NCBI RefSeq assembly: GCF_026571515.1
Contig: NW_026862271.1
Location: 1-64,000 of the forward strand
Source: Ruditapes philippinarum
Taxonomy: Eukaryota
Reading direction: 5' to 3'
Length of the DNA stretch: 64,000 nucleotides
Shown here: one piece after another, positions 975-33,089 of the stretch
Layout of the letters: each line of letters starts with the position of its first letter
Position numbering within the stretch: position 1 is the first letter of the stretch
Program-made: the position numbers and the translations under genes
The notes under the pieces: model-generated
What the model was told of the DNA's origin: nothing
The model's database searches: none
The model's input: the letters and a program-made list of their open reading frames with translations, nothing else

Positions 975-2943
975 TCACAGATGAGTATCTATTTGTTCAT
1001 TTCCTCCATTTTTCAAAGATGTACTTCTTGCTTGTTCGAGATCAAAAGGGGAATCTTCCTTATTTGCGGTATCATTTGAATTATTAAATTCGATGTTGAT
1101 TGAATCCGGTGCAAGTACACGTAATATTGAGAAATTGTTTATATCATCATAACGTACTTGTTCGTCATCTTTAATGCAACTATAGTTGATTACTGCGACA
1201 TCCTCTTTGTAAGTATATGTTTGCCTTTTCATCTCTGCATTCTGAATGTGAAACAATACACGATATAACAACTTTATTTGAGCATATTTTGCTATGAAGT
1301 GATTTTTATGCTGTTATTATTTTGTTATTAGTTTCGGTAGTATCACAAGATTATTCCTTCTTGCAATAGCATGCGACTGTAGGGAAACACTATGAACTAC
1401 TGAGATACTAAAAGTGAAATGACGATTACAACAGCTTCAGTAGTGAAATGCTTGTACGAGCGAGAAAATGATATTGACGACTATAGCTATAGCTTTTTTC
1501 AACGATAGAAACTGAAACAAGAACAATGGCTGTGGCAGTGAAAAAGCTGCAGCGGTGGTAATAGAAATAGTTAAATACATTAGCATAGGAGGTCACATCG
1601 GTATTTTCAAGGAAGACAAAATCAGCCGTAGTAGCTTGCTAAATGGTTAAGCTACTGGATCACTTGATATAACAAAGTAATGAACAGTTTCAATGTAAGC
1701 AGCACTGGCACACATGTGCTTTAATTAAATGTTGTAAATTTTAAGATACTATAAAATCTTCGTGATGAAGATACTTACCCTAGTTTTCAATTTTCTTTTC
1801 ACGATTATCCTAAAATGAAAGTATAGTTTTGTATAATTAAGGCAACATTTCATCTAGCAATAAAGCAAGCAATGCGGGAAATAAAAGGCTAATTATGCGT
1901 CAGAAATCCATAAAAATAAAATTCTTTAGGAATGTCAATGATATTTTGATTCTTTTTAAAAAAAAAATGGATTTGGAGAATGTTAGATGTTTCAAAGCTG
2001 AAAAAAGTATTACTGAATGTACAATAATGTGTCACAAAGGTAGCAAAATGTGAACAAATTAGTATTTTGACTTCCATACAAAATACTAATTTACTATAAT
2101 TATACCAAATGCCAACAAAGTATACCAAAATTATTTCAGTTTTTGTGACATAAAAATGATAGCATTTCTGAGACATAATGGACCTGTTAGAGTATTTTTC
2201 TATCAGTTTGATGCTGGGATCAGTTTGTTAACATTTCTAATTACGTGATTTATTATATTTATAATAACGGATCGGAAGAAATTATTCATATATTCATTGT
2301 ACTCTCGTTTTGTATGCTCATTCAAATTTAATGATAATCATATGTGTATAGTTATCTTTCTTTGTTATAACATTTGAGTTAAATTTATGATATAAAGTGA
2401 TAATGTAAACGAGATTTAGATAAAGAATACACAATGTGTCTATTTTTGTTTCTTCACTTACACGGTCAATATTACAAGAAATAGTAGTAACAAAACACTT
2501 AAAATTGCTATTAAACACGTGTCACTACATTCACTTGTTGTTGCTGCTATTTTTGTTGCCGTTGTGGTCTGCGACGCCGTAGTTGTATAATGATTGTTGG
2601 TCCCAGTAGGTGATGATGAAGTACTGCTGTCAACTGAATAATTTGTACTTGTTTCTGTTGTGGTAAACTGACGGGAAGTGCCAGTAGGTTTGAATGAAGT
2701 GAATCCATCTGTGGAATAGTTCATACTTGATATTGATGTTGTCATTATCGGACATTTTTGGTCTGTTAAAGTTTCATTTAGCCGACATCTTCGGGATATA
2801 TTGCAAGTCTCTAAATGACTCAGATTTTGTGTCAATGCATGATTATAAAAATCACTGTACTCCATCATTGGTGGTGGACACGGTGCATAATTTAGCATGT
2901 CATGTTCTAATCCACAAAATAACGTTCCGCATGTCATGTACAT
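975..2943 (-). CDS. Paralog P1 of novel APCPP Cys-rich single-pass membrane protein family, ~259 aa; exons 2943-2462, 1809-1779, 1241-975
   Basis: ORF 2458..2982 gives the Cys domain, Thr/Ser stalk and TM, ending at donor GT|GTAAGT (phase 2). A 31-nt micro-exon (TTTTAG|G..AGG|GTAAGT) encodes IIVKRKLKTR. The terminal exon after TTCAG| is in phase 0 (NAEMK...IDTHL*). All phases are compatible. An acceptor lies at 2983/2982 and the first ATG is at 2943. Confidence 0.8.
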
Positions 2944-4273
2944 TCCTATAATTTTAACCAACAAACAAATATGAACAAACACCTGAATTATTTAATTACA
3001 CTCTAACTCCCAACAATGGTTATCACAAAGTTAATATGTATCTAGGTCTGTTATCGACATTGATAGTATGAGCGCATGTTAAATCAATAGTAAAGCTAAA
3101 ACTATACATAGTTTATGAAAGTAGCGCTGCATTGTATGGAAGCCCTGGAGGGACATTTTAAATTAATTTTTAAAACTTAAAACTTATTATTTAAAATTTA
3201 ATTCTTAAGATTTAAAATTTAGTTTTTAATATTTAGTACTTAAATCTCATCATTAAAATGGACGCGGGAAACCATTCCGTTGACAGATTGACGCCACAAA
3301 GAGCGGCACAGAGAATACGAGTTGCGAAAGAAGTAAAGTAAGTTGGACTTTATGTACAAGAAAAACTGTTTTGAATCACACTATAAGCTAGGACACACAC
3401 ACGCACTTGATATCATGGTGAGGACTGGCTTGGACGGGTTTATTTATTTATTTTGCAAAAGACTATCCGTCCCAGACTGTAGGGGTTAAAGGTCAAAATT
3501 GGGCTGAGGGAATATAAAATAACTTGGTACAATTGTTCACCGCCATGACAAGGTGTGTAGAACGTAAGACCCATGCTTAAAGGTCAGAGTCACATTCAGC
3601 TGTCTTTTTTTTATACCTACATTGACTAGTCGTCCATTTTTGATGCAGTTCACAGCGTCTGCAATAAAATAAGCATAACAATCAAGAAGGCTGGACATGC
3701 TACCCTTGGGGATCTAGTTAAAAAGCTTAATAAAAAGCCTTGATTTTAAGACGAGTGTTTAGGGTCACCATCATCCTACTAGTATGATCATTGATTTGCA
3801 TTGGAAATTTACATTATCAGTCTTATAGGTTGTAGTAGTGTGCTTTTAAATGCCTGCAGTTTGCAAAAACCTTGCCACAGATTTTGGTAAAAGTTTTTGC
3901 TCAATGAAAGTGAAATGATAAACAAATACAATGTCAAAGAAGAATCTATACTGAAAGAAACCTCATTTTACCACAATTTATAAAGTCAGAGGCGTTCTGA
4001 AATAATTGCATCAATCCATTAATTGTACTGCAACAACTCTACATAGTTTATTGACTGGTTTACAGTACTGCAAAATACATTTTAACAGCTGATTTTATCG
4101 ATAATGATTGGGAATGTATAGTTGAAACTTTTAATTTAAGTTATAATATTTTCAAAGAGTCTGTTATTTATGTTTTTTGAGGTTATTTTTTTTGACATCA
4201 GTTATAAGGTATGTCCCTCTAAGGCCAAAATTGTATGAAATTGGTTCTTAATAAAACCTCTAATATATTTTAG

Positions 4274-5400
4274 GCAACTGCTGTGAAGAAAGGCAAAGGA
4301 CAAAGCAGTGCATGTAAAATGAAAATGGGATGGCAGAACTACCGAGATGGAAAGTACAGAGTTGATACTGAATCAAAAGGTGGATAAGCACGAGTGATGT
4401 ATTAAACATTTGGGGAAAGTCTGGCAGTAGAAAGAATAAGAAATAAAGCGCTTAGTACGGAGAAAGTAACATGGACAGTGTGGAGGACTACGACTTCTCA
4501 TTGGCTTAAGCATCAGGACAAGTAATTAACAGTTATACTGATGTAGACCAAAAACCATGCAGTTTCACAGAGTATTTTTACAGCTTACAATTTGTCTGCG
4601 TCACAGTGCCATATATACCTGAGATAAAAAAGGAGGACAAAAGTTTCATGATAAATGGAGTCCCTGTGGACAGAACTATTAACATAAAGTACAGCAAAAT
4701 CAAGCACTCATTATATTCTGAAGAACAATCTGAACTATTTGCCAATCAATATCGCGGTGCTTTAATAGGTCTGGGAGTCCAGAAAAAAGATAATTCATGA
4801 ATATGATCCGTTTGAAGGAAGATGGGTATGTGGTTTCTAGAATAGAAGTACAGAACAAAGTCTTCCTAGAAAGAGAGGAAAACGTTTATATTTGTCCAGA
4901 AGCTTCATCGCAGCAACATTTTGTATCGAATGTGCTAAATCAAATATTTGGTTTTTTTAAGTTAAAAATAGTAATTGTTTGGTTCTTGGTAAATCACAAT
5001 TGTTCATGATAATAATTACATTCATTTAAAAATGGTTGATAAACGGAAATTTATTTTGTAGTAATATCAATCGTTGTTCTGTTTTCATGTGAAATTGTAG
5101 GCAACTGACATATATGCTGTAGCCCTGTGATAATTATAAGCATACCAACTTATTGACAAATATAGATTATAATGTGATTATGATTATTATAATAATGTTT
5201 GCTTCTTAAACACCTTTATCTATGTAAAAAGTTGGTTTTTTGTACCTGCCAAATGCACACAGCACATTTGTGGCATATGTTTATTTTTAGTGGCAATTAT
5301 TGTTTTATTTCTCACCCACATGGCAAAACTTGCTATGTTTTTAACGTTACCTGAAAACATGAATCGTGTTATGAATACCCTTTTATTTTTATGATGTAGC
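4274..5400 (+). pseudogene. Degenerate second (passenger) ORF inside the IS3EU element
   Basis: After acceptor tttttag|4274 it reads ATAVKKGKGQSSACKMKMGWQNYRDGKYRVDTESKGG*. Further coding-like ORFs lie at 4606-5009, with a Cys/His cluster (KCTQHICGIC) near 5245. Stops and frameshifts are present. Confidence 0.35.
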
Positions 5401-6027
5401 ATACAGTAAGTAGTTACCCCAGATTGTTATTAATTGGAAGTTGAACCTGAAGCGATTGTAGATACCTTTGATTTTGTACTTTGATTAGTCACAGTAATTA
5501 AAGAGTAAAAGTTGTTACACTGACTTTGCTGCCTTATTTTTAAAGTGGACTGTAATTATACTTTTTAACAAACAACTATAGCCTATCTATACGCCATCAG
5601 TAAGGGAAAAAAGATTAGCATAAGGGATGATACCAAAGATGTCAAAGTTCTGTACTACTATTTCTTTCGCGGAACCTGTAACCAGATATCAATTTCTTGT
5701 AACCAACTGTTTTTAAAAAATGTCGAAAATGTTGGGGTTTCTTGTCATTAATAATTTCAGCCATTTTAGCTCAGAAGAGTAAGTTTCTTTACAATAAACG
5801 CAAAATAAACAAAATATAGATGGTTCAAGAGCTTGTCACAGACTTAATGGATCAAACAATAGTATACAAAAAAATAGATAAATACAGAATACAGAAAAGT
5901 TTGTTTGCCAGTTTTTTTTTAAAACAATATTTTAGATGCGTAACTATATGCATTGAAAACTGTTCAGAAATGAATAAAGCTCTGTGATTAATTCAATAAA
6001 GAGAAAATCTGATATATCTTGATTCCT

Positions 6028-6530
6028 TTTTAGCTCAGCTCAAAGGTGAGCTATTGTCATTGCCCGCTGTTTGTCGTCTGTTGGTGTGTTTCTCAACATT
6101 TCCCTTGTGAACACAATACAGGTCACATTTTGTATCCCATCTTCTTCAAAATTGCTCAGAATGTTTATCTAATTGTTTTTTAGGTTAATTTTTAATCTGG
6201 GTTATCTGGGGTTATAAACTATGTCACTAGTTCAAATAAGAAGAACATAGGGAACACTTTAGATGCTGTATTTTCAACTTGAACAACTTTCAGAATATTC
6301 GTCTGGATAATCTTCAGGTCGAGTTTGAAGCTGGGTCATATGCGGTAAATAGGTCAAATCAAAGAAAAACATTTTGAACACTACAGGTCTTTTTCATTTG
6401 AAACAACTTGTAACTTTATCATAGGTCATATATGTAGGTCAAAGTTGAAATTTGGTCTTTTGTGGTTAAAAAGTCCTAAAATTTGACCCCTTCTGGAGAA
6501 CATTTGGCAAAATTCAAAGAGCTCAAAATG
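6028..6530 (+). mobile_element. Degenerate HINE (Helentron-associated, pearl-like) nested in the IS3EU element
   Basis: Starts TTTTTAGCTCAGCTCAAAGGTGAGCTATTGTCA, followed by a GTCT-like microsatellite and degenerate repeat units. Confidence 0.5.
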
Positions 6531-6974
6531 TTTATCTTCTAATTTCCTACATACGGTTTACTTAGATTTCTAGTAATATTTACTCTGAGTCAGATTTGTC
6601 ATGCAATCAGCAATGTAGGATCAGAATGTTTCAAGAGAGGTCTCGTGTTTAAGTTATTTTATTATTATTTTTTCCGTTTGATTTATGACCTTTTCTAACA
6701 ATAAGTAACGCGAACTCGTGAAATTTTAACTAGCAGTTAAACATAAAAAAGCACATACTTCAAAAAAACATGAACATCAGAAAAACATGAACATCAATGT
6801 TTATTCATTAAAAAGTATATATATTATTGTCTAATGTTCAATCATTTGTATTTGTTTCATATTCAATATCCTACAAATCAACATAAACACCATAATCAGT
6901 AGAACCTGATAGTTCTAGTACATTAAACAACATTTTATTTCTGTTTCTCCAGTACAAGTGTCTACACGTTTCTG

Positions 6975-7315
6975 TGGTCAAATTCCAGTGAATACAATGC
7001 GATAAAGTCCCGCTAGAAGAACATCCGTTACATAAATTGCAAGCATTCTGCATGAATAGGGTTTGACGTATCAATTCGTTCAGGAGCTCTCAAATCCTTC
7101 AATGTATTCATCCACCTTGGTACAATAAGCCGTCTCCGCTAAACTGCAATTCTTTTTCTACTGTACCTGTACGATTTCTTGTGAAGTATACATGACACGG
7201 TGACGCCCTTAAATATTACAACGAAGTATCCTCTTTAACTGACGAAGACCAAGACGTATGTTGTGGCGACAAAGTAAAACAATTTCTGCGTACTTCAAGT
7301 CAGCATGAAAGTTTT
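6975..7315 (-). pseudogene. IS3EU-like transposase remnant
   Basis: Frame-disrupted peptides FHADLKYAEIVLLCRHNIRLGLRQLKRILR, VEKELQFSGDG, IDTSNPIHAECLQF and HWN resemble the N-terminal HTH and C-terminal parts of IS3EU-type transposases as I recall them. The DDE core appears deleted. Confidence 0.55.
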
Positions 7316-10300
7316 CACTTCTAACCTGGTGCTTCCGTTTTCAGTGGTAATAGGGATGACACAATTGTTGACACAGGAGTCATTGTCAATAAAATGATAA
7401 AGGCAAACTTCAACGGGATCTCCATGGTTACGACCTTAAAAGAAATAAAAATAAATGAAATATAGCGTTATAAAAACAAAGGGCTGGGGCTGTCAACATG
7501 TAATATTGTTATCCACCACCAACAACTAAACGTTATCGTTAGACAAACCTAACCCCCTGACTATTTGACACCATGTAATCAATAAAATGTAAAGCGGCAC
7601 CGTATCTGGTGTCTTTGATAAAACTAACATATCTTAATCGTTTCAACTGTTAGCATGAAAAATATAACAATCGAGATATAATAGTTCAGGGAATGTTATT
7701 GTGTATATAAAAAATGACAATTACCTGTAGGCAGCTACATCGAATTTCCCAGTTTTTCTTCGTGCAGAGACCGTTGAATTCAAATACCCGCGTCTTATGT
7801 TTTCTGATCTTAATTTTTAAGTAATAAGAATTAATTTTTAAATATTAAGAATTAAATTTTAAATATTAAGAATTAAATAATAAGTTTTAAATATTAATCT
7901 AAAATGTCCCTCCAGGGCTTCCATAGCATTGTTATATTTGATTATTTCTCATCACATATATAATTTCAATATCTAACTTTGTTTAATATGCTAATACAGG
8001 AATATAACTCTTTGGTATATATATATATATGTTATATTTATTAGAAGCAATTTTTCTAAATCTTTGATGTTTGTTTATTATTTTATCTATACATTTATAT
8101 GGTAATGTTTTCATAAATGAAAAATGGGTAAGATTTTTTCGGAATTTCTTCACTTATATCATTTATACATTCCTATTGTGATATATGGTGCGAAAATAAC
8201 CCGCCTTTTATTTTCTTTTAACGCTTAATAAGTACCATACCAGTAAAAATTTGGTTGTACAAGCGAATCTTACTGTGACTTCTATTTCTTGAATTCACAC
8301 AACTTAATACCAGATTTACAGGAAAGAACATGTTATATTATGGAATTCTTGTTAAACAGACCTCCTTCGATGGCAAGTGACAGATTTCCAATTTATCATT
8401 AATGAAATTCGTCACCAATAACAATACGGCTAAGGTGTAAACAAAGTAGTAGTAAAGATAGAGAAAAGAGGATGTTGGAAAAACTAATGGGGAGCCCCAT
8501 GTTGTCGGATGGTTGAATCCCAAAGTACTCAAAAGCTTTGTAGACAAAAAAATGGAGGAATTATTACTCATGAAACAAATTCTTCGTAGTTTACTAAATG
8601 CTCAACTACTTAAATAATTTCTTTCGGTAGATCTGTGTTTTTGTGAAATTTCAATAAGCTTCGGATATATTTCGATGCATTAGAAAATGTCGTATAAACA
8701 AGGAATGTTAGAAACAAAATGTATTATATCGCATCATAATTGCGCTCATATCTTAAATTACGTTATCTTAAAGGATGCGCATGTGTGTGCACATGTAGCG
8801 TCTATGTGTGGGTGTGGGTGAAGTTTGTTTTTTGTTTTTTTTTTGGGGGGGGGGGGGTAGCATTGTTACAGTTTTAAGGCCTTAATTCTCATATGTTCAT
8901 GAAATGTGTAATTTAGTGTAATTGTATTAGAAATAACTCAACGGATAAATTAGTAATAAATAAGGAAAGAAAATATTGAAAATTATTAAATCTATAAAAT
9001 GTCTGCTTGAAAATGTTGACATAATTATGTTAAAAAAACAATAACAAACGAACAAACGAACAAAAGCTCTATGATAAGAAACATTCTGTTTAAATTCTGC
9101 TATATTGCAAACATTGTGCTGTCACATGTATTAATATTTATGCACATGTTTATGATAGCTATAAGAATTTATTCATGCTTGTAAAACAATAAAAATAAAA
9201 CACAATAACTGCAAGCACGTTCATATTTTTAACACTTAGCAATAACTGCAAGCATGTTCATGAGCTCGTTATAAATATGGCCTCAAACTCATTAAAACAA
9301 TACGTGTTCCTTAGTCTGAATAAAACATGTTTCAATGATAAACGAAGGATCAATTTCTTGAGTTAAATAGGTCAAGGACTTGTTGTGCACCAATGTGCAA
9401 ATAGCTAGCTCAAATAACATAATTTAACCGTTTCGAAATCGTATTCATGCAGGTGATTTTCATGATTTGATAACGGGCGAAACACCACATGAAGCCACAA
9501 AAATTTGTTTTATGCTAAAAGCAAATAGACAATGATTATGCAGACGATCGTGCAGTTCTCTTTATTATACGTGTGCATATGAATGATTGAGATAACGAGT
9601 AACACGGTAGTATTTAAAATTAATGTGTCTTGCATATGCATTTGTAAAATGTTAACAAAGGCAAAAGAGAGCAGCTGAGTTAAAATAAACAAAGAATATT
9701 TCTTCTTTTCAAGTGTTTTATTGCTGTTTAAAGATAACAGTCGCACAATACAAGGCGCTCAGTTTTATGGAGGTCGTGAGACTTTTCAAACTTTTCAAAA
9801 TTATATAGGATAGGTATTTTGTTTCACTGAACTGTAAAAAAAATTATGATTGTGAAACAAATGGTTTAATAGATAATTTTGTATACAATATATATATGAT
9901 ATATATATAATCAGTCATTTTATGATTTAAACAATAAAAATGTTTCACAGCTATTTGACATTTTTAAGAAAAGTGCATCCACGAATACTGATTGATTGAT
10001 AAAAAAATGATTAAATTTTGATTTGTTTTATGTTAAAATTTTCGACCTCTTTCATTTCCTTTCTTTCGAGGATGCGTAATATTGTATCAATTGCAACTTT
10101 TACAATGATGCCTGCAACAGTCGCATCACTTTAATGTGCAACAGTTACTCTTTTCTCAAAGTCCGTGCATATTTTTTGAGCAATTAAAACATTCTTATTT
10201 TAAACTCATCGCAAGTGATCTCATTAAAACACGTTATTACAGGATAACATTTTCGACGTGTACTGATTGTGTACCGAATACGCTGTTTCTTTTGTTCTGT

Positions 10301-10316
10301 TCCTCAATTGTCATAT

Positions 10317-10904: not shown

Positions 10905-10989
10905 AATTTATCACTGAAGTGGGCTGAGGCTAAGCCAAGTTTGACTGATTTTAAAAACAATACATAAAATGATTTGTTCCACACGGTGT

Positions 10990-14903: not shown

Positions 14904-15138
14904 GAGCCGCGTCACGACAAAACCAACATAATGGGTTTGCGACCAGCATGGATCCAGACCAGCCTGCGCATCCGCGCAGTCTGATCAGAATCCATGATGT
15001 TCGTTTACCAACTCTATTACAAGTAGAGAAACTGATAGCGAACAGCATGGATCCAGATCAGACTACGCGGATGCGCAGGCTGGTCTGGATCCATGCTGGT
15101 CGCAAACCCATTATGTTGGTTTTGTCGTGACACGGCTC
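14904..15138. mobile_element. Complete palindromic MITE, Sola-type
   Basis: GAGCCG...CGGCTC termini, ~100-bp TIRs and 4-bp TSD AAAT on both sides. Confidence 0.85.
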
Positions 15139-16707: not shown

Positions 16708-16855
16708 GAAATAATGTATTCTCAACAGTGATTTTATCTCGAAATAAAAGTATGTTTATATTTCGGATGCGATAAATTGCACCATGAGGGGCGCATCCGA
16801 AAGATAAACAGTGATTTTATTTAAGCGACAGATTCACTGCTTGGGATATATTAAT
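16708..16855. repeat. Imperfect palindrome (foldback, possibly Crypton-like non-autonomous element)
   Basis: Arms GTTTATATTTCGGATGCG / CGCATCCGAAAGATAAAC with further outer complementarity. Confidence 0.45.
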
Positions 16856-17356: not shown

Positions 17357-19747
17357 TTACAACACTGATTCACTCCTATTGATATCTTTATCGTTTTCCA
17401 ATAAATGAGTACTTGTTTCTGGACATTGTATGTCATCGTTAGTTGTTTGTTCTTTTCTGCAATGTTTGCTTATTGAATACTTGGCCTGAAAATTAAAAAA
17501 GAGCTTATATGAATTTGTGTAAATAATAACTTTTACAGCAGCTGTTAAGTAGTATGCAGTTAGAGTTTGAAGTGGAAGTGAAATAGCAATGACATTTATT
17601 AAATCCGTTATCGATCTGTAGTCAACCTTTCACCCTTTAAAATTACGGTGCACCGATCTTTGTAAAAACGTATTGACCTATGCCAAAATAACATGCACTA
17701 GTTGTAGACTTTAAACTGTACCAAATACTCCGAAAAACGATTTTAGGAGCATCGTAGAACGAAAAGTGTTCTGGGGTGCATGTCCCCGTACCACATCAGT
17801 TGCACGGGTAAAAAATCGTGACTGTGGCCTGAATTTTAATAATTAGTAGAAACGATGACAAACGTCTCAAGTATTTCAAGCAGCAAAAGTGATCTTTGCG
17901 CGGTCTCGTTGCAATGAATTAATATAGGTTTAGATTACCGGAGACAGTATTGAACAATTAGAGTACAAACAGAAGTAGCGATAGCGATAGCACTGACATA
18001 AGCAATGAAAGTGACAAGAGTGTTGATGAACCATAAGCAATTGCAATGACAGTGACAAAAAACATCCGGATAATCAGCAGCGATGATGATTTGCAGATAT
18101 AATAGAAAGTAAAAATGTCCGCAATATATTTGTGAAAGCAAAAGTTGAAGCACTATCATAGGTGGCACTAGTTGTTGTAGCGACAGAGATATCAGGGACG
18201 ATACTACCGATAGTACAAGTAGCGAACATTACAATTACAATGGTTATATCAGAAGCAAGACAGTGATTGTCAGTGACTGCACCAACAACAGAAGCAAAAG
18301 CGATGGTAGCAATAATATCATTGGCAGAAACGGTAGTTGAAGAGGTTGTACTGAAACTACCAACAACAATACATGTAGAATTGGTTAAACATATTTATCT
18401 TTTAAAATACATATACATGCTAGTGATTTAATTATATAGAAAGCATTTCAAAAATCCTTACAAAAAAGGATAAGATTGGAAGATAAAGTCTTACAAAATT
18501 CTTTTCCTGAATTGATAGTTGACATATAATGTAAAAGATGCTTAATTCTTAACAAAGAAAACTGAGGCTTATATCTAAAAAGAGAAAACAGATGTGTATT
18601 ATTTGACTGCCTAAAATAGATATGGTTTGACGCAATCAGTAGCGATTGCAATTATTTCAACTAATAAATATAACTATTTTACGAAACGTAAGTAATGGTG
18701 GGGAGCAATGGAAGGGAAAGAATAACACATTCAAGTAAAGAATTACCCTTCTCTTCCTAAATTTTCTATAAGCGCTGAAAATGAAATATGTAAAACGATT
18801 TCATAATTATACCTAAATTAGATCATTTTGATTTTTATACAAATATGTAGAAACAAAATTTAGTGTTACCATTCGCAATATTGTAATTGGTGATACTCTG
18901 ATTTTTACTAATCCATTTGTTATAATTTTGTGATAAATTATTTGGTTTTCAAGAAAAAAACAATATTATTTCTCTACTCAACCACTAACTAAATTGCATT
19001 TTCTATGGAGATGTGACGGAAAAGCATCTTTAAATTGCAACTGAATACATCCTTACACGCCGCAGTTGTGGTGTGATCAAATAATGAAAATTATAACAGT
19101 AGCGCTTCGACAGTCCATAAGTATGCTTATAACAGTTATTCATTAAAATTTAAAAAGTTTGTTTTTTTTTAATTTTGAACATACATGTACTATAATGGAA
19201 GTCTGGATGATTGTCAACAGAGAAAAAAAGTGAGCTGTTTTGACGTCTAGCTCATTAAGAGACGTTGAGTTGGTGTTCAACTAAAAATAATTACATTCCA
19301 TGTAAGCATGTACACAATCACGTTATTATTGCTCATTATTGAACAAAATTTTATAAAAATGTTATATAATTATATAGAAAACACGTTTACTTACATATAT
19401 GATAATATCCAGATACCAATTATAATAACTACAACAATTATTACTACTAAGGTTGTTATTGTGGTGCTTGTCTGATTGGTTGTCGGTGTGGTTGTACTTC
19501 TTGTCGTGCAGGGAGTCTGTATGATTGGACAGTCTGTTTCAAAAAGTATACTATTTGTATAACATCTTCTGGCGATTATACAAACATCTTTTAACAACAA
19601 ACTGTTGTTAAGAGCATGATCTCGGAATTCCAAGTATGGTATCATCGGGGGAGGGCACGGTGCAGAGCGAGTAGCATCCTCAATACTTCTCCCTTTCATC
19701 GAACACAAACCGGTGTAAAAAGAAGTGAACATGAGTTTATAATCCAT
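17357..19747 (-). CDS. Paralog P2 of APCPP family, ~169 aa; exons 19747-19395, 18774-18747, 17485-17357
   Basis: ORF 19391..19747 (MDY..APCPPP..RDHAL..CIIARRC..TM) ends at AT|GTAAGT (phase 2). A 28-nt micro-exon TTTCAG|C GCT TAT AGA AAA TTT AGG AAG AGA AGG|GTAATT encodes AYRKFRKRR. The terminal exon TTTCAG|GCC.. encodes AKYSISK...RSESVL*. Confidence 0.78.
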
Positions 19748-21539
19748 AAATTTATCATTTACATTCCGTATTAAGATGCGAAAAGCATCTAGCTTTATAT
19801 TGCAGGATATTTCATCAGCTTATTTTGATTTTATGAACAATACAAGCGCATGTATTTCAGAATGCAGACTTACCGTATTGTTATCGTTCGTTTAATTGTC
19901 CATCGTCTTAGCCAGTCATGATTAAACATCCTTTGTACACTACTTTATTGTACCTTTCTTCAGTGTAAATCCAACATGGCGCGGAGAATTGTATATCATG
20001 CTTTTTACGAAATCATCCGAAAGAGTGTGACTTGTCCGCCTTGTGATGATTTTACGAAGTAAGAAAATCAACTATTTTACTTATACAATCTGCTTGTCAT
20101 TAAATAATTATATTATTAAGATTACATCTCAAGGTTACGCATATGGAAACAAATTGACACAATGTTACAAGTTCTTTTTCATCCGATAACAAAAAGCACT
20201 TTAACATGAAGCATGGGTCAATGACAAACTATGTTCAGATAAAATAAAGATAAACCATCTTTATATTTGCACAAAATTTGATTGTGGTACTGAAGATCAA
20301 ATAATATGATGTTCAGTTTCAATCTGTATTTGTTTTGAATACTTCATAAAGCAGATAACAACGAAACTATTTTTTTCACAGACCATATTGTTCGCAATTG
20401 TGTCGGTTCTTTCCCCCACTTTTTGTCTTTCAATGAAAACATCTTATAGTTGAATTCTTTCTAGTCACATTGTATTTGTTTTCATCTAATATAACTATTT
20501 TCACGTTATCCGCCATTTTATTATTAAAATGACAATTTTCAATTCAACTGTAATTTTTGTCGATTTTCCCCTCAAGTCAAATTTAACCATTAGAGCTTAA
20601 GGAGGTGGATTCATAAATTATTTTTTTCATCTAATTAAATGCAATTTGTATGACTCAAGAGCTAGAAATGGAGCACGTTTTTATGTGTTACTAGGCGATT
20701 TAAATTTCAGAAGTGCTTAAACTGTACCGACTACGAAAAATATGTATATAAATACTTTTGAAAAAACAAACAAATATATACAAATGAATTCAGAAAATAA
20801 AATAGAAAATAGAAAATTATTAATGTAAATCTTTAAAGGTTACTACTCTTTAAAATTAATCAAAAAATTGTCCCAAACACTGCAAGACGCGTATGCATTA
20901 TAAGCATATCAAGTTTTTTTGAGAATAGTATATATGTATTTGAAAATGTTATAGATACCTACGTATCTTGATTGTAAATAAAAGGTTTTGTTACCGTTCA
21001 CCCAGAGCCTCAATGGCATACAAGAATATCAAATACTACTAATGTATGTCAAGTCTTTATTGCAGTGATGATACATAACCCAAAACGTGATATGTAGTTA
21101 TGTACATGAAATCAGACATATACAATGTATTTCTTTGACATTATTTTTCTTTATCATATATTTGTTAATGCAATATTGCTGAAATATTGAGAAATATTGA
21201 TGAAATAAAATCCTTTTTATTCATTTTCCGTATTTTCACTGTAAATATAAATTTTCACTGCAGTTAAGCATATTTTCTGTATTTCCACTGGTATGTTGCT
21301 GGACTACATTCTTCTTATTTCAGCCAGCACACAAAATTAAAGGCGAAGTCTTTCCAATGATAAGGTTTTACTATAAATACGGGATATATTTTAATTACAT
21401 GGCATAAAAATTAAAATAGTTTATACCACTTGATGATATTAAACCCGTTTTGATAGATAAAACTTGAGTTTCATCTATTTATTATTGTTTCTAATTCGCA
21501 TTAAATTCCATGCGGAAACCGTAACTCGTTGAAGCGGTG

Positions 21540-23252
21540 TTACAATTTTGTAATTGTTATGCCTTGAGTTTCATTATTTACATATATAACGCTTGATTGC
21601 TTTAGTACAGTTTCTTTTGACAAATTTTGATCACATTTGTGTCCATGTTCATCATATATAGTACGTTGTGGTTCCGTAACCGGAGTAGCAGAAATAATTC
21701 TTATTTGTTTTGTCTTCCTTAATTTCAAGTAGATTATCATTCCTCTGAAATTTAGAAGGTAAATGTCAAACTCGTCAATTAATATATTTACAATGACAAA
21801 CATTAGCCAAAACAAAATCAGAAATATGAAGACAAAGATCCAACAGTGGAGAGTGATACTAACGTAACGCATCCCCCGGCAACGTAAGAAGTAGGAACCA
21901 TGATCACATTAAAATGTAGTTTTTCTGTGTGCTTCTGTAAGTAATGTTGTCAAAATTATATACGAATTTACGAGTACATGAGTTATAGAATAATGAGTTA
22001 TATCAAATAGTGGGTTATCACATTTTCAAAAATGCATTTTTATTTATTTATTTATTTGCTTCATGGCTGATTACAAGATTTATAAACGAACATGATATAT
22101 AAAGAGCTTATAATGAGGTCTTATAAGAGGTACAAAATCTTTAAAGCCATATCGACATTAAATGTTTTAACACCTGTAAAACATATCCAAATAACACATT
22201 TTGTTTCAACATCTTAACAAAAGATACTCGCACGAGGTAAAAGCACTTTTACTTACATATTTTTTCTGGAGTTTTGTCATAGCATTAAATGATTAAATCA
22301 ATGAAATACTGCAAGATATGTTTTAAAAATGAAACTGTCAAGTTTGGGTTTTTCATATTAGTGTTGACGCCTTTCGTTTTCTTTCATACATTTATTTTAA
22401 GAAAAAACTAATAATGTCAGTTTAACTTAACAAATTATTATCTTGAAAATTATCTAGAGAATTAATAACATTTTAAAAGCTGTGTACAACGTTGTAAAAT
22501 TTTTGGTTGCACGATTGGCAAAAATGCGAGAAATTCAACAAGAACATTAATTTTCGAAATTCCTTTAGATTAACTAAATATCTAGTGTAAATGTTTCAGA
22601 AAGATCTTTTAGATTATTTTACTTATTTTATGAAATTCCCTCTTTAAGATTGTAATTTTAAAATGACAAATACAAATTCTGCTAATATTCAGTTATTCCC
22701 TGTAAATTTCAAAGGAGGTCAAACCGTCTTCGTCCGAAAAAAGTAATAAAACTGGAGGATATTACTTCAAGAGAAACATTTGAAACGTGAATATTTGTAT
22801 GATTTTTGTCGTAAGTTATTACCAAACCATACTCACACGATGATGACAGCAATAGCAGACAAAAGTACGATTAGTATAACTATACCAATATCTTCGGAAT
22901 TAGCTTGTGAAATCGGTAAGTAATCACTGGATAACACTGTGCTTAGAGATGTACGAACTGTAGACGATGTCTGATACGTCGATGAAATCGTACTTGCAGA
23001 TGAGTTACCAGTAACAATGCTAGATAAATCATCTGTTGTCACAGTTGTTGATGTTAACGAGCAGTCAATATTAGAACCAGTTAAACCACATCTTGTTGCT
23101 AAGTTACAAACTTCATGCATACACAAACTTTGATTTAGTGCATGATCTCGGAATTCATTATAATTAAACCATTGTGGAGGACAAGGTGCAAAATTCAGAA
23201 AATCTATGTTTGTGACATTAGACGTCAGTTTACATAGACCAAAATAATCCAT
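21540..23252 (-). CDS. Paralog P3 of APCPP family, ~206 aa; exons 23252-22837, 21744-21540
   Basis: ORF 22833..23252 ends at GT|GTGAGT (phase 2). Acceptor TTTCAG|A GGA ATG continues in frame as GMIIYLKLRKTK...GITITKL*. Confidence 0.82.
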
Positions 23253-23787
23253 ATTAAAAACGTATGTCTCTGCTATGTAAAAGTTTCAATTAAAAAGATA
23301 TTCCATAAGTATATTCACTGTGCACAAATCAAAATATTTCATATAGTATATCTAAAGCATTTACAGCGTAGATAAATAACACGTGATATCACAAGCGAAC
23401 AAATAAAATGGTGATAATATAATACTGCATGAGGTATATGATAAATATGGTAAACTATGTAATTATATAGCTAAGCATGCAGGTGCAAATTAAATGATAA
23501 TGATACATAACATGTATGTAAAATTATTTTTACACCATTACATAAAATGATAATGCAATCAGAGGGCGATAAATAAACTTTGGACAAAATATTATTCGTT
23601 GCAAGAAAAAAGACAAGTACGAATATCAATTGTACTATCTGTAATATATATAATGTAAATGCTCTTCAGGGATGGAGGTAATAAAGATAATAATAAATAT
23701 AATGTATTATGTGTTTTTGATTATGTAATAAAACATTAACAAACATATTTGATTATTAAATGAATTATAACTGGTGTGCATGTAAAG

Positions 23788-25474: not shown

Positions 25475-25649
25475 NNNNNNNNNNNNNNNNNNNNNNNNNN
25501 NNNNNNNNNNNNNNNNNNNNNNNNNNNNNNNNNNNNNNNNNNNNNNNNNNNNNNNNNNNNNNNNNNNNNNNNNNNNNNNNNNNNNNNNNNNNNNNNNNNN
25601 NNNNNNNNNNNNNNNNNNNNNNNNNNNNNNNNNNNNNNNNNNNNNNNNN
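25475..25649. other. Assembly gap (N run)
   Basis: 175 N. Confidence 0.99.
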
Positions 25650-26232
25650 CGTACAGACGCACGCACGCACGCATGCACTGACTCTTTATGACCTAAGCGG
25701 TGGTTGAAAGGACGACAAGTTTAGATCTGTGCCTTTGTATATAAAAGTTTTCAAATACCTTTTTGGTTATGTCTTTTTTTCTCTAAAGTTACTTTCCATG
25801 TCAAAGAGTGTTTAGTTTATATAGATGTCTGATTAAATTGATTTTGATAAAGCAGTCAAACTATGGCAGGAACGATGATAGGGGGTGGGGGGGATTATGA
25901 AACATGCAATTCAAATTACCAGCTTGATGTGGATATCTTTTGGTATTGTTATGCATGTTATGACTACTACTGATTATGATCATTTGGTATGAAATAAAGT
26001 TTTTATCATTGTCCATCTTAATAACCGATAAGGACAGAAATACAAAACTGCCGTATGAACATAAAGATAATAATAAGCAATGATGTTATTCAGATAGAAA
26101 TATGAATAATTCAGGAATTCAAACTCCATTTAATTACCATTAACGTGCGTCATTGAAAAAAAATGAAAACGTGTTGTTAGTGGCGACAGCGGAGTATTTT
26201 TATTTATTTGCTTTCATCCGCGTATAACTGAA

Positions 26233-27212
26233 TTACGCAGTTGTTGTTTTAATATTTTGTAGGTTTTGTTCTAAATTTCCTTCACTAGAATTTTCTGAAA
26301 CAGGTTCTTTAATCGTTGAATAGCACTGCAATTCAAGGTCTTCTTTTGTTGTTCTAGGTGTTTCTTTTACAGTGTGTTGAGAATTTGTTGTATTAGCCCT
26401 TTTCTTTCTTTCCTTGTAGAGTGATATTCCTCTGAAATATAACGAATAACACATGGGTTTAACTGAAGAAGAAATGTTTTTTTTTATTATTTTGTTATAC
26501 TATGTTTTGGCTGCAATATCTAAGCAAATGTTATAGAATATTAAGTTTTTAAAGATATACTCTGCCCATCTTTGAGTAAAATATTCTTACGGAATATGTC
26601 GATAAATAAAAGAATGAATAAGCGGGGTTTTCTATTACAGGTCAGGTAAAGTTAATCTTCACTTAATGACACTATATATGCATATTGTGACCATCTATAG
26701 TGTGTAGAATTTTAAACATAACATATCCATTGTGTGTGAAGTCAAAAAATGTTACTTTATATTAAAAAGAAACAGTGTATCAACGGGAACATCTTTCTAA
26801 ATAATACATTTAGGTTTCCTTGAACGTGCCTAATAAGTGTATTATCAAATTATACTCACATGATTGTCATGATTGTCATGATAATGGCTGCAAGAATAGT
26901 CCAAACCACACTGAGTATGATTTTAATGTCATCGTCATTATTAACGTCGTCAAATGGTTGGTTATTACCAGTAACAACGCTGGATAAATCAGTTGCTGTC
27001 GCAGTCGTTGATGTTAACGAGCAGTCAATCTCAGAACCAGTTAGACCACATCGTTTTGCTAAGTTACAAACTTCATGCATACAAAAACTTTGATTTAATG
27101 CATGGTCTCGGAATTCTCTATAATTAAGCCACGACGGAGGACAAGGTGCGGAATTAAGAAAATCCGTGTATGTGATATTAGACGTCAGTTTACATAGACC
27201 AAAATATTCCAT
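26233..27212 (-). CDS. Paralog P4 of APCPP family, ~183 aa; exons 27212-26860, 26431-26233
   Basis: ORF 26856..27212 ends at AT|GTGAGT (phase 2). Acceptor TTTCAG|A GGA ATA continues as GISLYKERKKR...IKTTTA*. The ectodomain is 59/70 identical to P3 by manual alignment. Confidence 0.82.
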
Positions 27213-28303
27213 ATTAAAAGATGTATGTTTCTGCTGAGTTATTGTTTCACTTTTAAATCATTATACATGGTAACATTCCAATCAAACTTTTTCATACTGT
27301 ATATCTAAAGATTTGGGTTTTTTTGCCGCGCTATTTCCCATTTTCACTTATATTCCATGACTTGATTCATTGCAAATAGATCGTATTATTCGTTATACGC
27401 AGATAAGTCTTAACAAGTAACAATATTTATGGTAAGCTATTAAAATTGAATGTTGTGGATATATATATATATCAACATGCAACTTTATTAATGACGTGTC
27501 ATATATTATGACGTGTCATATATTATGATCTTAAGTTTACCAAAGTAGGATATTTATAAAATCACACAATTGTGATCAGTGGCGTTAAACAATGATGTGA
27601 AAATCCGGAATAAGTGCACTCATTTTCATTTTTATTGTTGAGAAAATGTACCGTTAAATTATTAGTTAATTGTCATAAGTCATTTAACCAACAGAAGATA
27701 ATCACGTGATATAGTAACCATCTATCTCCACAATAACTGCGTTATGTTAAGGATATTAAAAAAGCAGTTTTATGATACAGGTAGCAAAATAATTTACAAT
27801 GTGATAAATTAAGGAGCATTTATTTACAATTAAAAGTATTTGCGTGACAATAACACTGGTAAAACAAAATACAACCGTGACTTGGTAAAAACCATAACAA
27901 TAAAGTACAGTCATAAACGATCACTTAAGATTTCAGTTAAAATAGTTTAACCATTAGCAGGATAGTAAATTGATAACAATAGTTAACAATAGTAGCAATG
28001 AAAGCAAAAGTTGTCTCACAATACTGTAAATTTGTTGTATATTGTATATATTGTATAATATACAATTGTTTATACTTTACAGAAAGTTCGAAACCACCAA
28101 CGTCATCCCATAACTATTTCATTTCTTTTGACAAATCATTAAAGTAACTTTAATTCCTGGACTATAAAATAAAAAGAGTATGTAAATAACTTCCAAGGTC
28201 AATAGATCAAACAACCTGGACAAATACAATATTTTACATCCAAAAGTGCTATAAAAAATTCTGCTTTAAGCACACTATAATATTAATATAAATGAAAGAC
28301 ATA

Positions 28304-30469: not shown

Positions 30470-30864
30470 TATTTAATTATTTATGAAAAAGAGGATACTG
30501 AACGAGTGTATGTTCAATACTGAATTTATTGAAAGAGTTGAAAAAATATATATTATGTGAGCGAAAAACAACAACAACAAAAACCCCACAAAAAAAACAA
30601 AGATACAAACAAACAAAAATAACACTAACACGTTAGCAAGGACATTTTCACCAATTCTCGACACCTAAGCCTCACGACAGTGTTTTTTTTAAGTTGATGC
30701 TGTGCACAAACTTGACGTGCATGCATTTATAAGTAAAACGATGGCAACGATTGTACAAGCGCGTTGTTTCGATGTTTCTCAAATATTTAATACGTGTATA
30801 AGAACCACTGTGCAAAATGTAGACTTTTCTCTTCATAATGGAACTAAACATTAATTACACGCAT

Positions 30865-33089
30865 TTATAATTTTGCAACAATACAAGTATCATTCTTTTC
30901 TCCATTTGAACGACTTCGCAAACCGCTTTTAATTACTGGTGAATCGGTTGGGTCATTATCTTTAAAACTTGTAAAATTTCCATCATTTTCTTTAGTTGAC
31001 TGTGAATGTTCAATAACGTCTGGACTACTTTTAACTTTTTCATTTGTAGTAACATTTTCATAGTGACAGTCAGCGTGAACTTCAAGAATGTTAGATGATC
31101 CTCGGTCACTAGATTTCCCGCTAGTTTCACTGTCTGTATCGTTAAATACGACATTGATCGCATCTTGTTTAATATCACCACTCCTTCTTTTGTATACTAC
31201 AATTATCAATCTGAAAATTAACAAGTTAAATTGAATTCATATGTTACTAGATTTTTCGATATAATATACATTCTAAAACGACAATCAACATACAAAAGAT
31301 TACAAATAAAGTCACATGCTTAAATTCCTTTGGAATTCAACACCAACAGTATTACCGAAAAACAAGGAGTATACAATTGGAAGGGGGTCGAATTAATCAA
31401 CATATACGTATGTTAGTAACATTTATAGAATGGAATACTTTTATTTCCAGTCAAAGGTTTTGTAAAATGACATATAAATCACAATAATAATGAGATCAAC
31501 GATCAATTAAAAATGTAAACGAAAATAAAGCTTGATTCGTATTAGAAAGTAACAATAGAGAGAAAATAACTGATAAACAAACTAAAGTTTACAAACTTAA
31601 CTACTAAACACCATATTTAAAATGTAATGATACTTTAAAACACAATAACTGTATATAGTATCTTATTGTAGGTTTTCTTTTAAATTACATTCCATGAAGC
31701 ATTTTACAAAAATAAATTTGCTGATCTGAGACATTTTTTCAAAGTTCAAATTCCTATCTTTTATTTCACTATATGAAATGCTGCGTTGACTAGTAAAAGC
31801 ATTACAAGCAGTTACAAAGTGAAGCTCGTCTTCAACTTCTTTTCAGTTGCACTCCTCACAGAATCTTCTATCAGACTTGATTGTTTTATATCCACCAATC
31901 TCTATTTGCAATGTGTGTTAGAACTTATCCTTATCTTTGTAAAACAAGTTATAATATCTTTATCTTTGATTCTGCTAAATAAGGTTGCCTACAAAAATCT
32001 GTACATAAGTACGTAGTTTTCAATCATTATCTTTACCATTTTTCAATTTATCAATAAATTGTATTGAACAATAAGATATTGATTCTTTATATAAATTTTC
32101 AGATATTTTTAAATATTTTAGTATAAAGAATACACTGAATAACCAACTATTTCTTTTACAATTGTAAAACATTTCGCAATCAACATGAGCATTGTTTTAA
32201 AAAGTTCACTAACTGTAGATTTAGTTAATCTTGTATAATACTTAATTAAACCGATTATGCAATCAAAATATAAATGAAACCTCCCCAATTCACCGGAAAC
32301 AGCATCATTGCATGTTTTTTGTGAATCCCTAACACACGTTTAAGGAATTGTTTATGTAATTTTTTCACATGGCATATCATTAAATCATTTAATGCAATTA
32401 ATGCATTGTCATTTTGTTTGTAAATATTGAAGAAGAAATAGATACTGTTTAAACCAAAGCATTGAAATAGACAAAATCGCCCTTTCACTCTACCGGTTGC
32501 TGTATTCAGAGTATTCGTTCATGTGTACAGTTAGCTCATTTTGCAGAAATAATGCTTTGAGACTATGCAACCGCCACGAGAATTGTTTATTAACTAACAG
32601 GTCGTTTGCATTGATGATTATGCAAAATGTTTGAAAAATATTTATGATTTACATGAATTTATATGAATGTGCATGAATTTGCAAGTAAATCTTTACATTG
32701 CTTTATAAAAGAATAAATAAAGAAGAAATATAAATGTTAATGTTCGTTCTTTGACATTCAAAGAGTTGTTATAACACGACAAAATATACATGTACTTACA
32801 TGCTAATAAGAAGAGCAACGCTTAACACAGATGCAATGATGATTATACAAAATAAATTACATCCTACTTCGGCTTGGGTATCGTGTACAGGGCAGTCCGT
32901 AGTCAGTTCTGAACTTTCTGACATGTTGCATCTTCTAGCAATACTGCAGACCTCCCTCTTGCACAGCTTTCCTATGGCTGTCATTTTCAGTTGAATATAG
33001 GACAAAAACGGTGGAGGACAAGGAGCACACTGCAACATGTCTTCAATCTCGCCGCCAGTGGTACAAGAACACGAGTGTACATAATCCAT
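30865..33089 (-). CDS. Paralog P5 of APCPP family, ~211 aa; exons 33089-32800, 31210-30865
   Basis: ORF 32796..33122 contains MDYVHSC..APCPPP..CSIARRC..TM and ends at AT|GTAAGT (phase 2). Acceptor TTTTCAG|A TTG continues as LIIVVYKRR...HYENV...IVAKL*. Confidence 0.8.
31790..32400 (-). pseudogene. LINE ORF2 3' fragment (Cys/His knuckle region) in the P5 intron
   Basis: Motifs KKLHKQFLKRVLG, KIRISS, QIEIGGY, RRFCEEC and EVEDELHFVTAC. Confidence 0.7.

What the first reader, a model, noticed from the sequence alone, without database searches (positions are those of the whole stretch)
975..33089. Tandem array of five paralogous, unrecognised Cys-rich single-pass receptor-like genes
Seen: five same-strand genes (P1 975-2943, P2 17357-19747, P3 21540-23252, P4 26233-27212, P5 30865-33089). 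They share one architecture: Cys-rich APCPP domain, S/T stalk, TM, basic patch, low-complexity tail. All splice in frame with canonical sites, and none has a stop or frameshift despite strong divergence, which implies purifying selection. I recognise no known domain. Inference: local tandem expansion, rapid divergence and Tyr/PDZ-motif tails resemble diversified cell-surface signalling or immune receptor clusters, so this may be an undescribed lineage-specific receptor family.
Basis: partly seen in the sequence, partly recalled or inferred. Interest (0 to 1): 0.92.

Follow-up and report, generated by a model that had tools for sequence, protein, structure and literature searches.

The report
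Clam-specific orphan single-pass membrane glycoprotein cluster
Five neighbouring genes of the Manila clam really do encode a family of small cell-surface-type membrane proteins with a new cysteine-stapled helical head and no signal peptide, known so far only from venerid-type clams and never studied, but nothing yet shows that they are immune receptors.

Summary
Five minus-strand paralogs lie at the stated coordinates. They share a ~65-aa N-terminal Cys domain (APCPPP…RC), a variable S/T stalk, one TM helix, a basic patch and a disordered tail. Every first exon ends at the same phase-2 GT[AG]AGT donor. RNA contigs show spliced P2 (with a 28-nt microexon) and P3. My P3 and P5 models equal the RefSeq proteins XP_060558181 and XP_060558166 ('uncharacterized', Ruditapes philippinarum). 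The assembly gap lies outside every coding sequence.

The array runs on into contig C153 (at least 8 genes; about 12 loci genome-wide). A profile search of 1.84 billion proteins found 45 relatives. The named ones come only from Ruditapes, Mercenaria and Mactra. Pfam, PDB sequences, Foldseek, VIA-align and the ESM Atlas give no known domain; the model is a small helical cap.

The domain always starts at about residues 4-10, and positive charge follows the TM, so the proteins are type III (N-out, no signal peptide). The cap is under purifying selection (dN/dS 0.1-0.7). The tails drift almost neutrally, except for juxtamembrane and C-terminal S/T-x-Φ (PDZ class I-like) motifs. The Tyr/ITAM motifs are not conserved.

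Best reading: mucin-like, PDZ-anchored surface glycoproteins. The immune-receptor idea is unsupported. The scan's other notes on this family come from this same window.

The parts
975..2943 (-). P1 gene (CDS span). Exons 2943-2462, 1809-1779 (predicted microexon coding the basic patch) and 1241-975. 259 aa, ending in DTHL.
   Evidence: ORF and donor. Microexon and acceptor search. The model translates without stops. The microexon and its splice sites are 100% identical in the C153 copy. No RNA was laid on it.
2743..2925 (-). P1 Cys-rich N-terminal domain
   Evidence: Alignments A2/A3. Own-genome profile hit 105 bits.
17357..19747 (-). P2 gene (CDS span). Exons 19747-19395, 18774-18747 (28-nt microexon coding IAYRKFRKRR) and 17485-17357. 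169 aa, ending in ESVL. The mRNA also covers the 5'UTR up to at least 20056-20106 and a 3'UTR to about 16807.
   Evidence: RNA contig of 1369 nt in X20 carries both joints, CT..AC on the + strand, i.e. GT..AG on the - strand. Translation. AATAAA at 16821.
19520..19714 (-). P2 Cys-rich N-terminal domain
   Evidence: AF2 model of residues 1-80 has a core pLDDT of 85-90 and is helical.
21540..23252 (-). P3 gene (CDS span). Exons 23252-22837 and 21744-21540. 206 aa, ending in ITKL. Equals RefSeq XP_060558181.1 (LOC132718500).
   Evidence: RNA joint in X19. Full-length AF2 model.
23052..23243 (-). P3 Cys-rich N-terminal domain
   Evidence: pLDDT 91-96.
23005..23274 (-). Block shared with P4 (27235-26965) at 88% nucleotide identity, with sharp edges. 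It covers 22 nt of 5'UTR, the Cys domain and the start of the stalk. Gene-conversion-like tract.
   Evidence: blastn gives a single 271-bp HSP. Sliding identity is 80-94% inside and about 50% outside.
26233..27212 (-). P4 gene (CDS span). Exons 27212-26860 and 26431-26233 (predicted). 183 aa, ending in TTTA.
   Evidence: The acceptor is homologous to that of P3 (exon 2 starts GISLYKERKK, against GMIIYLKLRK in P3).
27012..27203 (-). P4 Cys-rich N-terminal domain
30865..33089 (-). P5 gene (CDS span). Exons 33089-32800 and 31210-30865. 211 aa, ending in VAKL. Equals RefSeq XP_060558166.1 (LOC132718484).
   Evidence: Mercenaria orthologue at 49% identity.
32883..33074 (-). P5 Cys-rich N-terminal domain
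25475..25649 (.). Assembly gap (N) between the P4 3' end and the P3 5' flank. It is not part of any coding sequence.
   Evidence: N runs; poly(A) signals at 26208 and 26134 lie before it. Not filled or looked up.

Best explanation
The five genes belong to an old tandem array in the Manila clam (Ruditapes philippinarum). The array holds at least 8 genes, and the genome holds about 12 family loci. The family is seen so far only in Venerida clams.

Each gene encodes a small type III single-pass membrane glycoprotein. It has no signal peptide, so the TM segment acts as a reverse signal-anchor that puts the N-terminus outside. From the outside inward the protein has:
- a ~60-aa helical cap, probably stapled by a disulfide between the two invariant cysteines (the APCPPP Cys and the R-C Cys) and carrying a conserved N-x-S/T sequon;
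- a mucin-like S/T stalk of very variable length;
- one TM helix, followed by a K/R stop-transfer patch;
- a disordered acidic cytoplasmic tail. In many members the tail ends in a class I PDZ-type ligand (S/T-x-V/L/I/F; P1 ends in DTHL, P2 in ESVL, P3 in ITKL).

The most likely mode of action is that of a scaffold-anchored surface glycoprotein, as in podocalyxin or glycophorin C. The conserved cap would be the recognition or adhesion module, held away from the membrane by the glycosylated stalk. The tail end would tether the protein to PDZ scaffolds.

Shown: gene structure, splicing of P2 and P3, family membership, selection pattern and motif enrichment. Inferred: topology, glycosylation, disulfides, PDZ binding and the surface role.
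For: - Five paralogs with the same phase-2 donor. Spliced RNA for P2 and P3. P3 and P5 equal RefSeq models.
- The array continues on C153: C153:1-9893 is colinear with window 13216>1 at about 90% identity, and three more genes follow.
- There are 17 solid genomic hits, about 12 distinct loci.
- 45 relatives among 1.84 billion representatives. The named ones come only from Ruditapes, Mercenaria and Mactra.
- The domain starts at residues ~4-11 in nearly all hits. The P2 mRNA has an in-frame stop 4 codons before its ATG.
- No member has an N-terminal hydrophobic stretch. All 29 full-length members have net charge +1 to +9 after the TM and at most +2 before it.
- AF2 gives a cap pLDDT of 85-96 with three or four short helices, a disordered stalk, a TM helix (pLDDT 90-97) and a disordered tail.
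- Cap dN/dS is 0.1-0.7. For P1 against its C153 copy: cap 0.24, stalk 0.63, tail 0.92.
- PDZ-like C-termini occur in 10 of 29 members, against 0.9±0.9 in shuffled tails. DTHL/DTYL is kept between the two P1 copies.
- P5 and its Mercenaria orthologue keep the juxtamembrane and C-terminal tail pieces.
- The podocalyxin DTHL motif binds NHERF PDZ domains (PMC1796660).
Against: - There is no experimental datum on localisation, glycosylation or partners.
- The tissue of the RNA runs that express P2 is unknown. In the two raw-read RNA runs, X23 and X24, exon depth is no higher than intron depth.
- P4 (TTTA), P5 (VAKL) and 17 other members lack a canonical PDZ ligand.
- The PDZ enrichment test does not correct for relatedness.
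- N-x-S/T sequons also occur in the tails, so sequons alone do not fix the topology.
- P1-type ectodomains of about 140 aa are long for translocation without a signal peptide.
- Disulfide pairing could not be read from the models.
Confidence: 0.55

Rival explanations
1. They are diversified innate-immune or paired signalling receptors. The cap would bind microbial or self ligands, and the tails would signal through Tyr motifs (ITAM, ITIM, YxN), with neighbours such as P3 and P4 forming activating/inhibitory pairs.
For: - Tandem array of divergent single-pass proteins.
- P3 and P4 share a sharply bounded 271-bp ectodomain block at 88% identity, joined to unrelated stalk, TM and tail.
- P1 has YSCI-x7-YDDI, and P5 has YENV.
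Against: - The ITAM-spaced pair is broken in the C153 copy of P1 (YSYI…DDDI).
- YENV is not kept in the Mercenaria orthologue.
- The tail evolves almost neutrally (dN/dS 0.92).
- Neither the P3 nor the P4 TM segment holds a charged residue.
- The cap is under purifying, not diversifying, selection.
- The lineages predate the Ruditapes/Mercenaria split.
- No expression data from immune challenge were available.
Confidence: 0.12
2. They are organelle or secretory-pathway membrane proteins, for example of granules or endosomes, rather than plasma-membrane proteins. Acidic Ser/Thr clusters in the tail and the x-K/R/H-L C-terminus would then act as sorting signals.
For: - A conserved acidic S/T cluster lies next to the membrane in the P5 lineage (FNDTDSE…).
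- Many C-termini read x-[KRH]-[LFI].
- The best, though insignificant, fold matches are to the Pex14 N-terminal three-helix bundle, itself the N-terminal part of a single-pass organelle protein.
Against: - The fold matches are at noise level (Z 4.3, Foldseek E about 3), and there is no Pfam Pex14_N hit.
- Mucin stalks and conserved sequons are typical of surface proteins.
- PTS1-type signals act on soluble proteins (general knowledge).
Confidence: 0.15
3. They are not functional genes: chance ORFs, pseudogenes or repeat-derived sequence.
For: - The surroundings are AT-rich, and the stalk and tail are low-complexity.
- Some copies elsewhere look truncated (L013, L017; C5597 carries a TGA).
Against: - Spliced transcripts exist.
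- All five frames are intact and the intron phase is conserved.
- Cap dN/dS is below 1.
- Orthologues exist in another genus.
- RefSeq models exist.
Confidence: 0.02

Closest known systems
CD34 / podocalyxin / endoglycan sialomucins
   Same: Single-pass membrane protein with a mucin-like O-glycosylation region plus a small Cys-containing globular part. Short cytoplasmic tail ending in a class I PDZ ligand: podocalyxin DTHL binds NHERF (PMC1796660), and P1 ends in the same four residues.
   Different: - They have a signal peptide (type I), and the order is mucin domain then Cys domain. Here there is no signal peptide, and the Cys cap comes first.
- The only Pfam CD34_antigen hits are sub-threshold (3 of 49 members, best E 0.0097).
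- There is no sequence or fold relation.
Glycophorin C (type III erythrocyte sialoglycoprotein)
   Same: From general knowledge: no cleavable signal peptide, an N-out glycosylated ectodomain, one TM, and a C-terminal PDZ ligand that ties it to a membrane-skeleton scaffold (p55/4.1R).
   Different: Glycophorin C has no folded Cys-stapled cap. No sequence similarity was found in any search here. This is a resemblance in working principle only.
BCMA / TACI / BAFF-R (type III TNF-receptor family members with a single Cys-rich domain)
   Same: Small type III receptors whose Cys-rich domain begins a few residues after the initiator Met.
   Different: - TNFR Cys-rich domains are disulfide-ladder beta-hairpin modules (general knowledge).
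- There is no Pfam hit even at E 10.
Pex14 N-terminal three-helix bundle
   Same: It is the top-ranked structural neighbour in both search methods and for both models. It is a small three-helix domain N-terminal to a single TM.
   Different: Z is 4.3 and Foldseek E about 3-5, within noise for helical models. There is no sequence signal. Pex14 has no cysteines or APCPPP motif (general knowledge).

Membership tests
Any Pfam-A family (ectodomain) | Profile match at or near the gathering score | tested here: not met
   The five exon-1 products at E up to 10 gave only sub-threshold hits to unrelated families, none reaching its gathering score (RIFIN, TMEM154, Baculo_gp64). The 49 family members gave only weak TM/juxtamembrane hits and none on the cap.
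CD34/podocalyxin sialomucins | PF06365 CD34_antigen match; signal peptide; N-terminal mucin domain followed by a Cys-bonded globular domain | tested here: not met
   3 of 49 members hit at best E 0.0097, below the cut-off. No N-terminal hydrophobic segment. The domain order is reversed.
CD34/podocalyxin sialomucins | C-terminal DTHL/DTEL PDZ ligand | tested here: inconclusive
   P1 ends in DTHL and its C153 copy in DTYL. The other four window genes end in ESVL, ITKL, TTTA and VAKL.
Type III TNFR (BCMA/TACI/BAFF-R) | TNFR-type Cys-rich domain (Pfam BCMA-Tall_bind / TACI-CRD2 / BaffR-Tall_bind), beta-hairpin fold | tested here: not met
   No Pfam hit. The predicted fold is helical, pLDDT 85-96.
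ITAM-bearing immunoreceptors or adaptors | Conserved cytoplasmic YxxL/I-x6-8-YxxL/I | tested here: not met
   Present only in window P1 (YSCI-x7-YDDI). The second Tyr is Asp in the C153 copy. Absent from P2-P5.
Class I PDZ-ligand-bearing membrane proteins (functional class, not a homology family) | C-terminal S/T-x-hydrophobic residue on a cytosolic tail | tested here: inconclusive
   3 of 5 window genes and 10 of 29 full-length family members carry it, against 0.9 expected. Binding was not tested.
Type III (signal-anchor, N-out) membrane proteins (topological class) | No cleavable signal peptide; a single TM with the positive charge on its C-terminal side | tested here: met
   - The domain starts at residues 4-11.
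- There is an in-frame stop upstream of the P2 ATG in the mRNA.
- The best 10-residue hydropathy window in the first 25 residues is mostly below 1.5.
- Net charge is +1 to +9 after the TM in 29 of 29 members.
The topology itself is not testable with these tools.
Pex14 N-terminal domain | Significant fold or profile match | tested here: not met
   VIA Z 4.3, Foldseek E 3-5. No Pfam hit.

The most novel reading that the evidence does not exclude
The APCPPP cap is a new extracellular fold that defines a clam-specific class of signal-peptide-less receptors. Gene conversion moves one and the same ligand-binding cap between neighbours with different stalks, TM segments and tails (P3/P4). An alternative P2 transcript makes a tail-only soluble product. 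Together these would form a paired or decoy receptor system for recognition of microbes, gametes or self.
Probability: 0.1. Interest if true: 0.7.

Novelty: new variant of a known kind. Interest (0 to 1): 0.4.

Why it matters
Bivalve genomes are full of lineage-restricted genes whose roles are unknown. This family is unusually tractable:
- It is small (about 12 loci) and compact (160-260 aa for most members).
- It has a well-defined new domain of about 60 residues that models confidently.
- Its topology without a signal peptide is clear.
- It carries a testable scaffold-binding motif.

If the cap proves to be a recognition module, it would add a new extracellular domain type to animal cell-surface biology. 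It would also give clam immunology or cell biology a handle in a farmed species. If not, it is one more orphan membrane glycoprotein family.

Tried and rejected
No match or no result:
- Pfam on the five exon-1 products and on 49 family members: nothing on the cap.
- PDB sequence profile search: 0 hits at E up to 10.
- Foldseek against PDB with two models, and against BFVD: nothing below E 1.
- VIA-align wide: best Z 4.3, the Pex14 N-terminal domain, treated as noise.
- ESM Atlas, twice: only generic helical hairpins, and an LDLa hit at 0.75, which is below the chance level.
- Rfam on the whole window: no hit.
- Tandem repeat scan of 1-34000: only one 21-bp AT repeat at 7810-7876.
- Papers: no hit for six LOC identifiers (P5 and five Mercenaria relatives), for APCPPP, or in a general Ruditapes search.

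Tools that fell short:
- The search for homologous proteins with a full-length profile returned only 4 proteins because of its word-index limit. It added nothing.

Ideas rejected:
- TNFR-type Cys-rich domain: the fold is helical.
- ITAM signalling: the motif is not conserved.
- Paired activating/inhibitory receptors for P3/P4: no charged TM residue.
- A hidden signal-peptide exon: the P2 mRNA and the database N-termini speak against it.

- The joined P1, P2 and P4 products were translated only inside scripts and were not sent to any search tool. Searches used single exons by reference, or database proteins returned by the tools.
- The assembly gaps were neither filled nor looked up.

Full report
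**What is there.** The window is AT-rich (about 31% GC). It comes from the RefSeq assembly of the Manila clam, Ruditapes philippinarum: proteins encoded in it are XP_060558166.1 and XP_060558181.1, on a contig of 551,637 bp. A six-frame motif scan finds exactly five open frames with A-P-C-P-P, all on the minus strand, at 2886, 19663, 23189, 27149 and 33026. The five products align over a ~65-residue N-terminal domain whose invariant residues include A-P-C-P-P, a Tyr, an Ala, R-C and further cysteines. Each then runs through an S/T-rich stretch into a hydrophobic segment.

**Gene structure.**
- Every one of the five open frames ends, inside or just after the hydrophobic segment, at the same phase-2 donor, xx|GT[AG]AGT. 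The same holds for ten further paralogous loci in the genome.
- RNA contigs of two RNA-seq runs (X19, X20) give the P2 transcript directly: 20056…19395, then 18774-18747, then 17485 down to about 16807, with GT..AG introns. An AATAAA lies at 16821.
- P2 therefore has a 28-nt microexon that encodes the basic stop-transfer patch.
- X19 also holds a P3 joint that fits 22837>21744.
- My P3 (206 aa) and P5 (211 aa) models are identical to the RefSeq proteins P0048 and P0006.
- P4 (183 aa) is predicted with an acceptor homologous to that of P3.
- P1 (259 aa) needs a 31-nt microexon at 1809-1779 that again encodes the basic patch. This microexon and its splice sites are 100% identical in the second copy on contig C153, while the flanking introns are 93-94% identical.
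- The joined P1, P2 and P4 products were translated only inside scripts.

**The assembly gap.** 25475-25649 lies 584 bp downstream of the P4 stop and 2.2 kb upstream of the P3 start. Two AATAAA signals (26208, 26134) precede it. No reading frame of the finding crosses it. I did not fill it or look it up. What it hides is unknown.

**Size and age of the family.**
- A profile of the five domains finds 17 places in the clam's own genome; a broader profile finds the same 17 plus one degenerate copy with a TGA.
- C153:1-9893 is colinear, in reverse, with window 13216>1 at about 90% identity, so it overlaps the left end of the window's contig as a divergent haplotype copy. C153 then carries three more same-strand members. 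The array therefore has at least eight genes. With haplotype duplicates removed, the genome has about twelve loci in three places.
- A 12-sequence profile scored against 1.84 billion representative proteins found only 45 proteins at E ≤ 0.001 (26 at E ≤ 1e-10). Two of the weakest are plainly repeats.
- All named hits are 'uncharacterized' or 'hypothetical' proteins of Ruditapes philippinarum, Mercenaria mercenaria (at least seven on one 121-Mb chromosome, two on another) and Mactra antiquata.
- A tree of the short domain is poorly resolved. It does pair P5 with a Mercenaria gene (98/89), puts P2 in a clade with the C153 genes and two Mercenaria genes, joins P1 to a gene on C956, and joins P3 to P4.
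- Synonymous divergence between these lineages is saturated (dS 1.3 to above 3). The array is thus old and retained, not a recent local burst.

**Is the domain known?** No.
- Pfam gives nothing on the cap in five or in 49 members. The weak hits are to TM or juxtamembrane parts of TMEM154, EphA2_TM, CD34_antigen and the like.
- A PDB sequence profile search gives nothing.
- AlphaFold2 with family alignments models the cap confidently: pLDDT 85-90 for P2 and 91-96 for P3. It forms three or four short helices, followed by a disordered stalk, a TM helix (pLDDT 90-97) and a disordered tail.
- Foldseek against PDB and BFVD finds nothing below E = 1. VIA-align against 48,161 chains peaks at Z 4.3 for the Pex14 N-terminal three-helix bundle, well inside the noise for helical models. 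The ESM Atlas gives nothing usable.
- No paper mentions these loci or the motif.
- Column counts over 34 members show two invariant cysteines (P3 numbering C24 in APCPPP and C55 in R-C). Three more are common (C7, C49, C64) and others are optional. A core disulfide C24-C55 is my inference.

**Topology.**
- In nearly all hits the domain begins at residues 4-11.
- The mature P2 mRNA has an in-frame stop four codons before its ATG and no splice in the 309 nt upstream.
- No member has a signal-like hydrophobic stretch in its first 25 residues.
- All 29 full-length members carry net positive charge (+1 to +9) in the 15 residues after the TM, and at most +2 (mostly zero or negative) before it.
- Together with the conserved N-x-S/T sequon between helices and the mucin-like stalk (up to about 55% S/T), this points to type III, N-out/C-in proteins. 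This is inference from the positive-inside rule, not a measurement.

**Selection and motifs.**
- The cap is under purifying selection: dN/dS 0.08-0.72 in pairs where dS is not saturated or zero.
- Between P1 and its C153 copy: cap 0.24, stalk 0.63, TM plus basic patch 1.2 (few sites), tail 0.92.
- The ITAM-spaced YSCI-x7-YDDI of P1 is not kept in that copy (YSYI…DDDI), but the C-terminus is (DTHL/DTYL).
- P5 and its Mercenaria orthologue keep the cap, the TM, a juxtamembrane acidic S/T cluster and the last dozen residues. They do not keep the central tail or the YENV.
- Across the family, 10 of 29 full-length proteins end in S/T-x-[VLIF], against 0.9±0.9 (maximum 6 in 5000) for shuffled tails. 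Three more end in x-K-L. This count is not corrected for shared ancestry.
- In the window, P1 (DTHL), P2 (ESVL) and P3 (ITKL) carry the motif; P4 (TTTA) and P5 (VAKL) do not.

**P3 and P4.** They share 88% nucleotide identity over one 271-bp block (23274-23005 against 27235-26965). The block runs from 22 nt before the ATG to the start of the stalk. Its edges are sharp, and the flanks show only background similarity. In this block dN/dS is 0.40. This looks like gene conversion or a partial duplication of the cap-coding segment. Neither TM segment has a charged residue, so the classical activating/inhibitory pair is not supported.

**Interpretation.** The best-supported reading is a Venerida-restricted family of type III, mucin-like surface glycoproteins. 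The conserved helical cap is the functional, probably ligand- or partner-binding, part. The otherwise drifting tail keeps a membrane-proximal segment and, often, a PDZ class I ligand. It works like podocalyxin/CD34 or glycophorin C, but it is not a member of either family (see the membership tests). Podocalyxin's DTHL binds NHERF PDZ domains (PMC1796660).

The immune-receptor reading is not excluded, but it has lost its main sequence arguments. P2 has k-mer depth of about 36 in the two small RNA runs labelled 'mollusc metagenome'. In the two raw-read runs of the species it shows no exon-over-intron excess. Its expression is therefore probably tissue- or stage-restricted, but the tissue is unknown.

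**Verdict.** The family is real, expressed, uncharacterised and without a known domain, but its genes are already in RefSeq as 'uncharacterized' models, its general architecture is a familiar one, and no function is shown.

Noticed in passing
window 18774-19874 (- strand), run X19: An alternative P2 joint runs from a donor in the 5'UTR (19874, CG|GTAAGT) straight to the microexon (18774). Its depth is similar to the canonical joint. From the upstream ATG at 19929 it would read in frame into the normal tail, giving a ~70-aa soluble 'tail-only' product that ends in ESVL.
   Followed up: partly
window 46800-48296 (+ strand): Two open frames match Pfam Nuc_sug_transp (PF04142; E 4.6e-15 and 0.002). 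They are the 3' exons of an SLC35-type nucleotide-sugar transporter gene next to the array.
   Followed up: partly
window 21180-21211: A 32-nt AT-rich piece draws about 25-fold read depth in RNA runs X23 and X24, with loose ends on both sides. It is a short repeat shared with abundant transcripts from elsewhere, not a local gene. There is no Rfam hit in the window.
   Followed up: partly
window 3136-7956 against L018 (C153:6693-6736): About 4.8 kb of the window is missing from the otherwise colinear C153 copy (about 90% identity). This is a large indel between the two haplotype copies, upstream of P1.
   Followed up: no
L013 (C1647:450917-451129) and L017 (C1647:464986-465198), against L014 and L016: Two copies of the METLMNCTC… subfamily have first-exon frames that stop inside the S/T repeat, before any TM. 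Their near-identical counterparts on C14488 and C77 are intact. They are possible pseudogenes, or length or frame variants of the mucin repeat between haplotypes.
   Followed up: no
G000:C5597:145938-146133: A weak, split match to the domain profile (32 and 27 bits) with a TGA inside: a probable decayed family copy.
   Followed up: no
window 38162-38360: A second assembly gap (N run), outside the finding.
   Followed up: no
P0005 (JGI/IMG record): A metagenome-derived copy of the P1-type first exon is labelled 'cobalamin biosynthesis Mg chelatase CobN' by its source. This is an evident mis-annotation of clam DNA in a metagenome.
   Followed up: no
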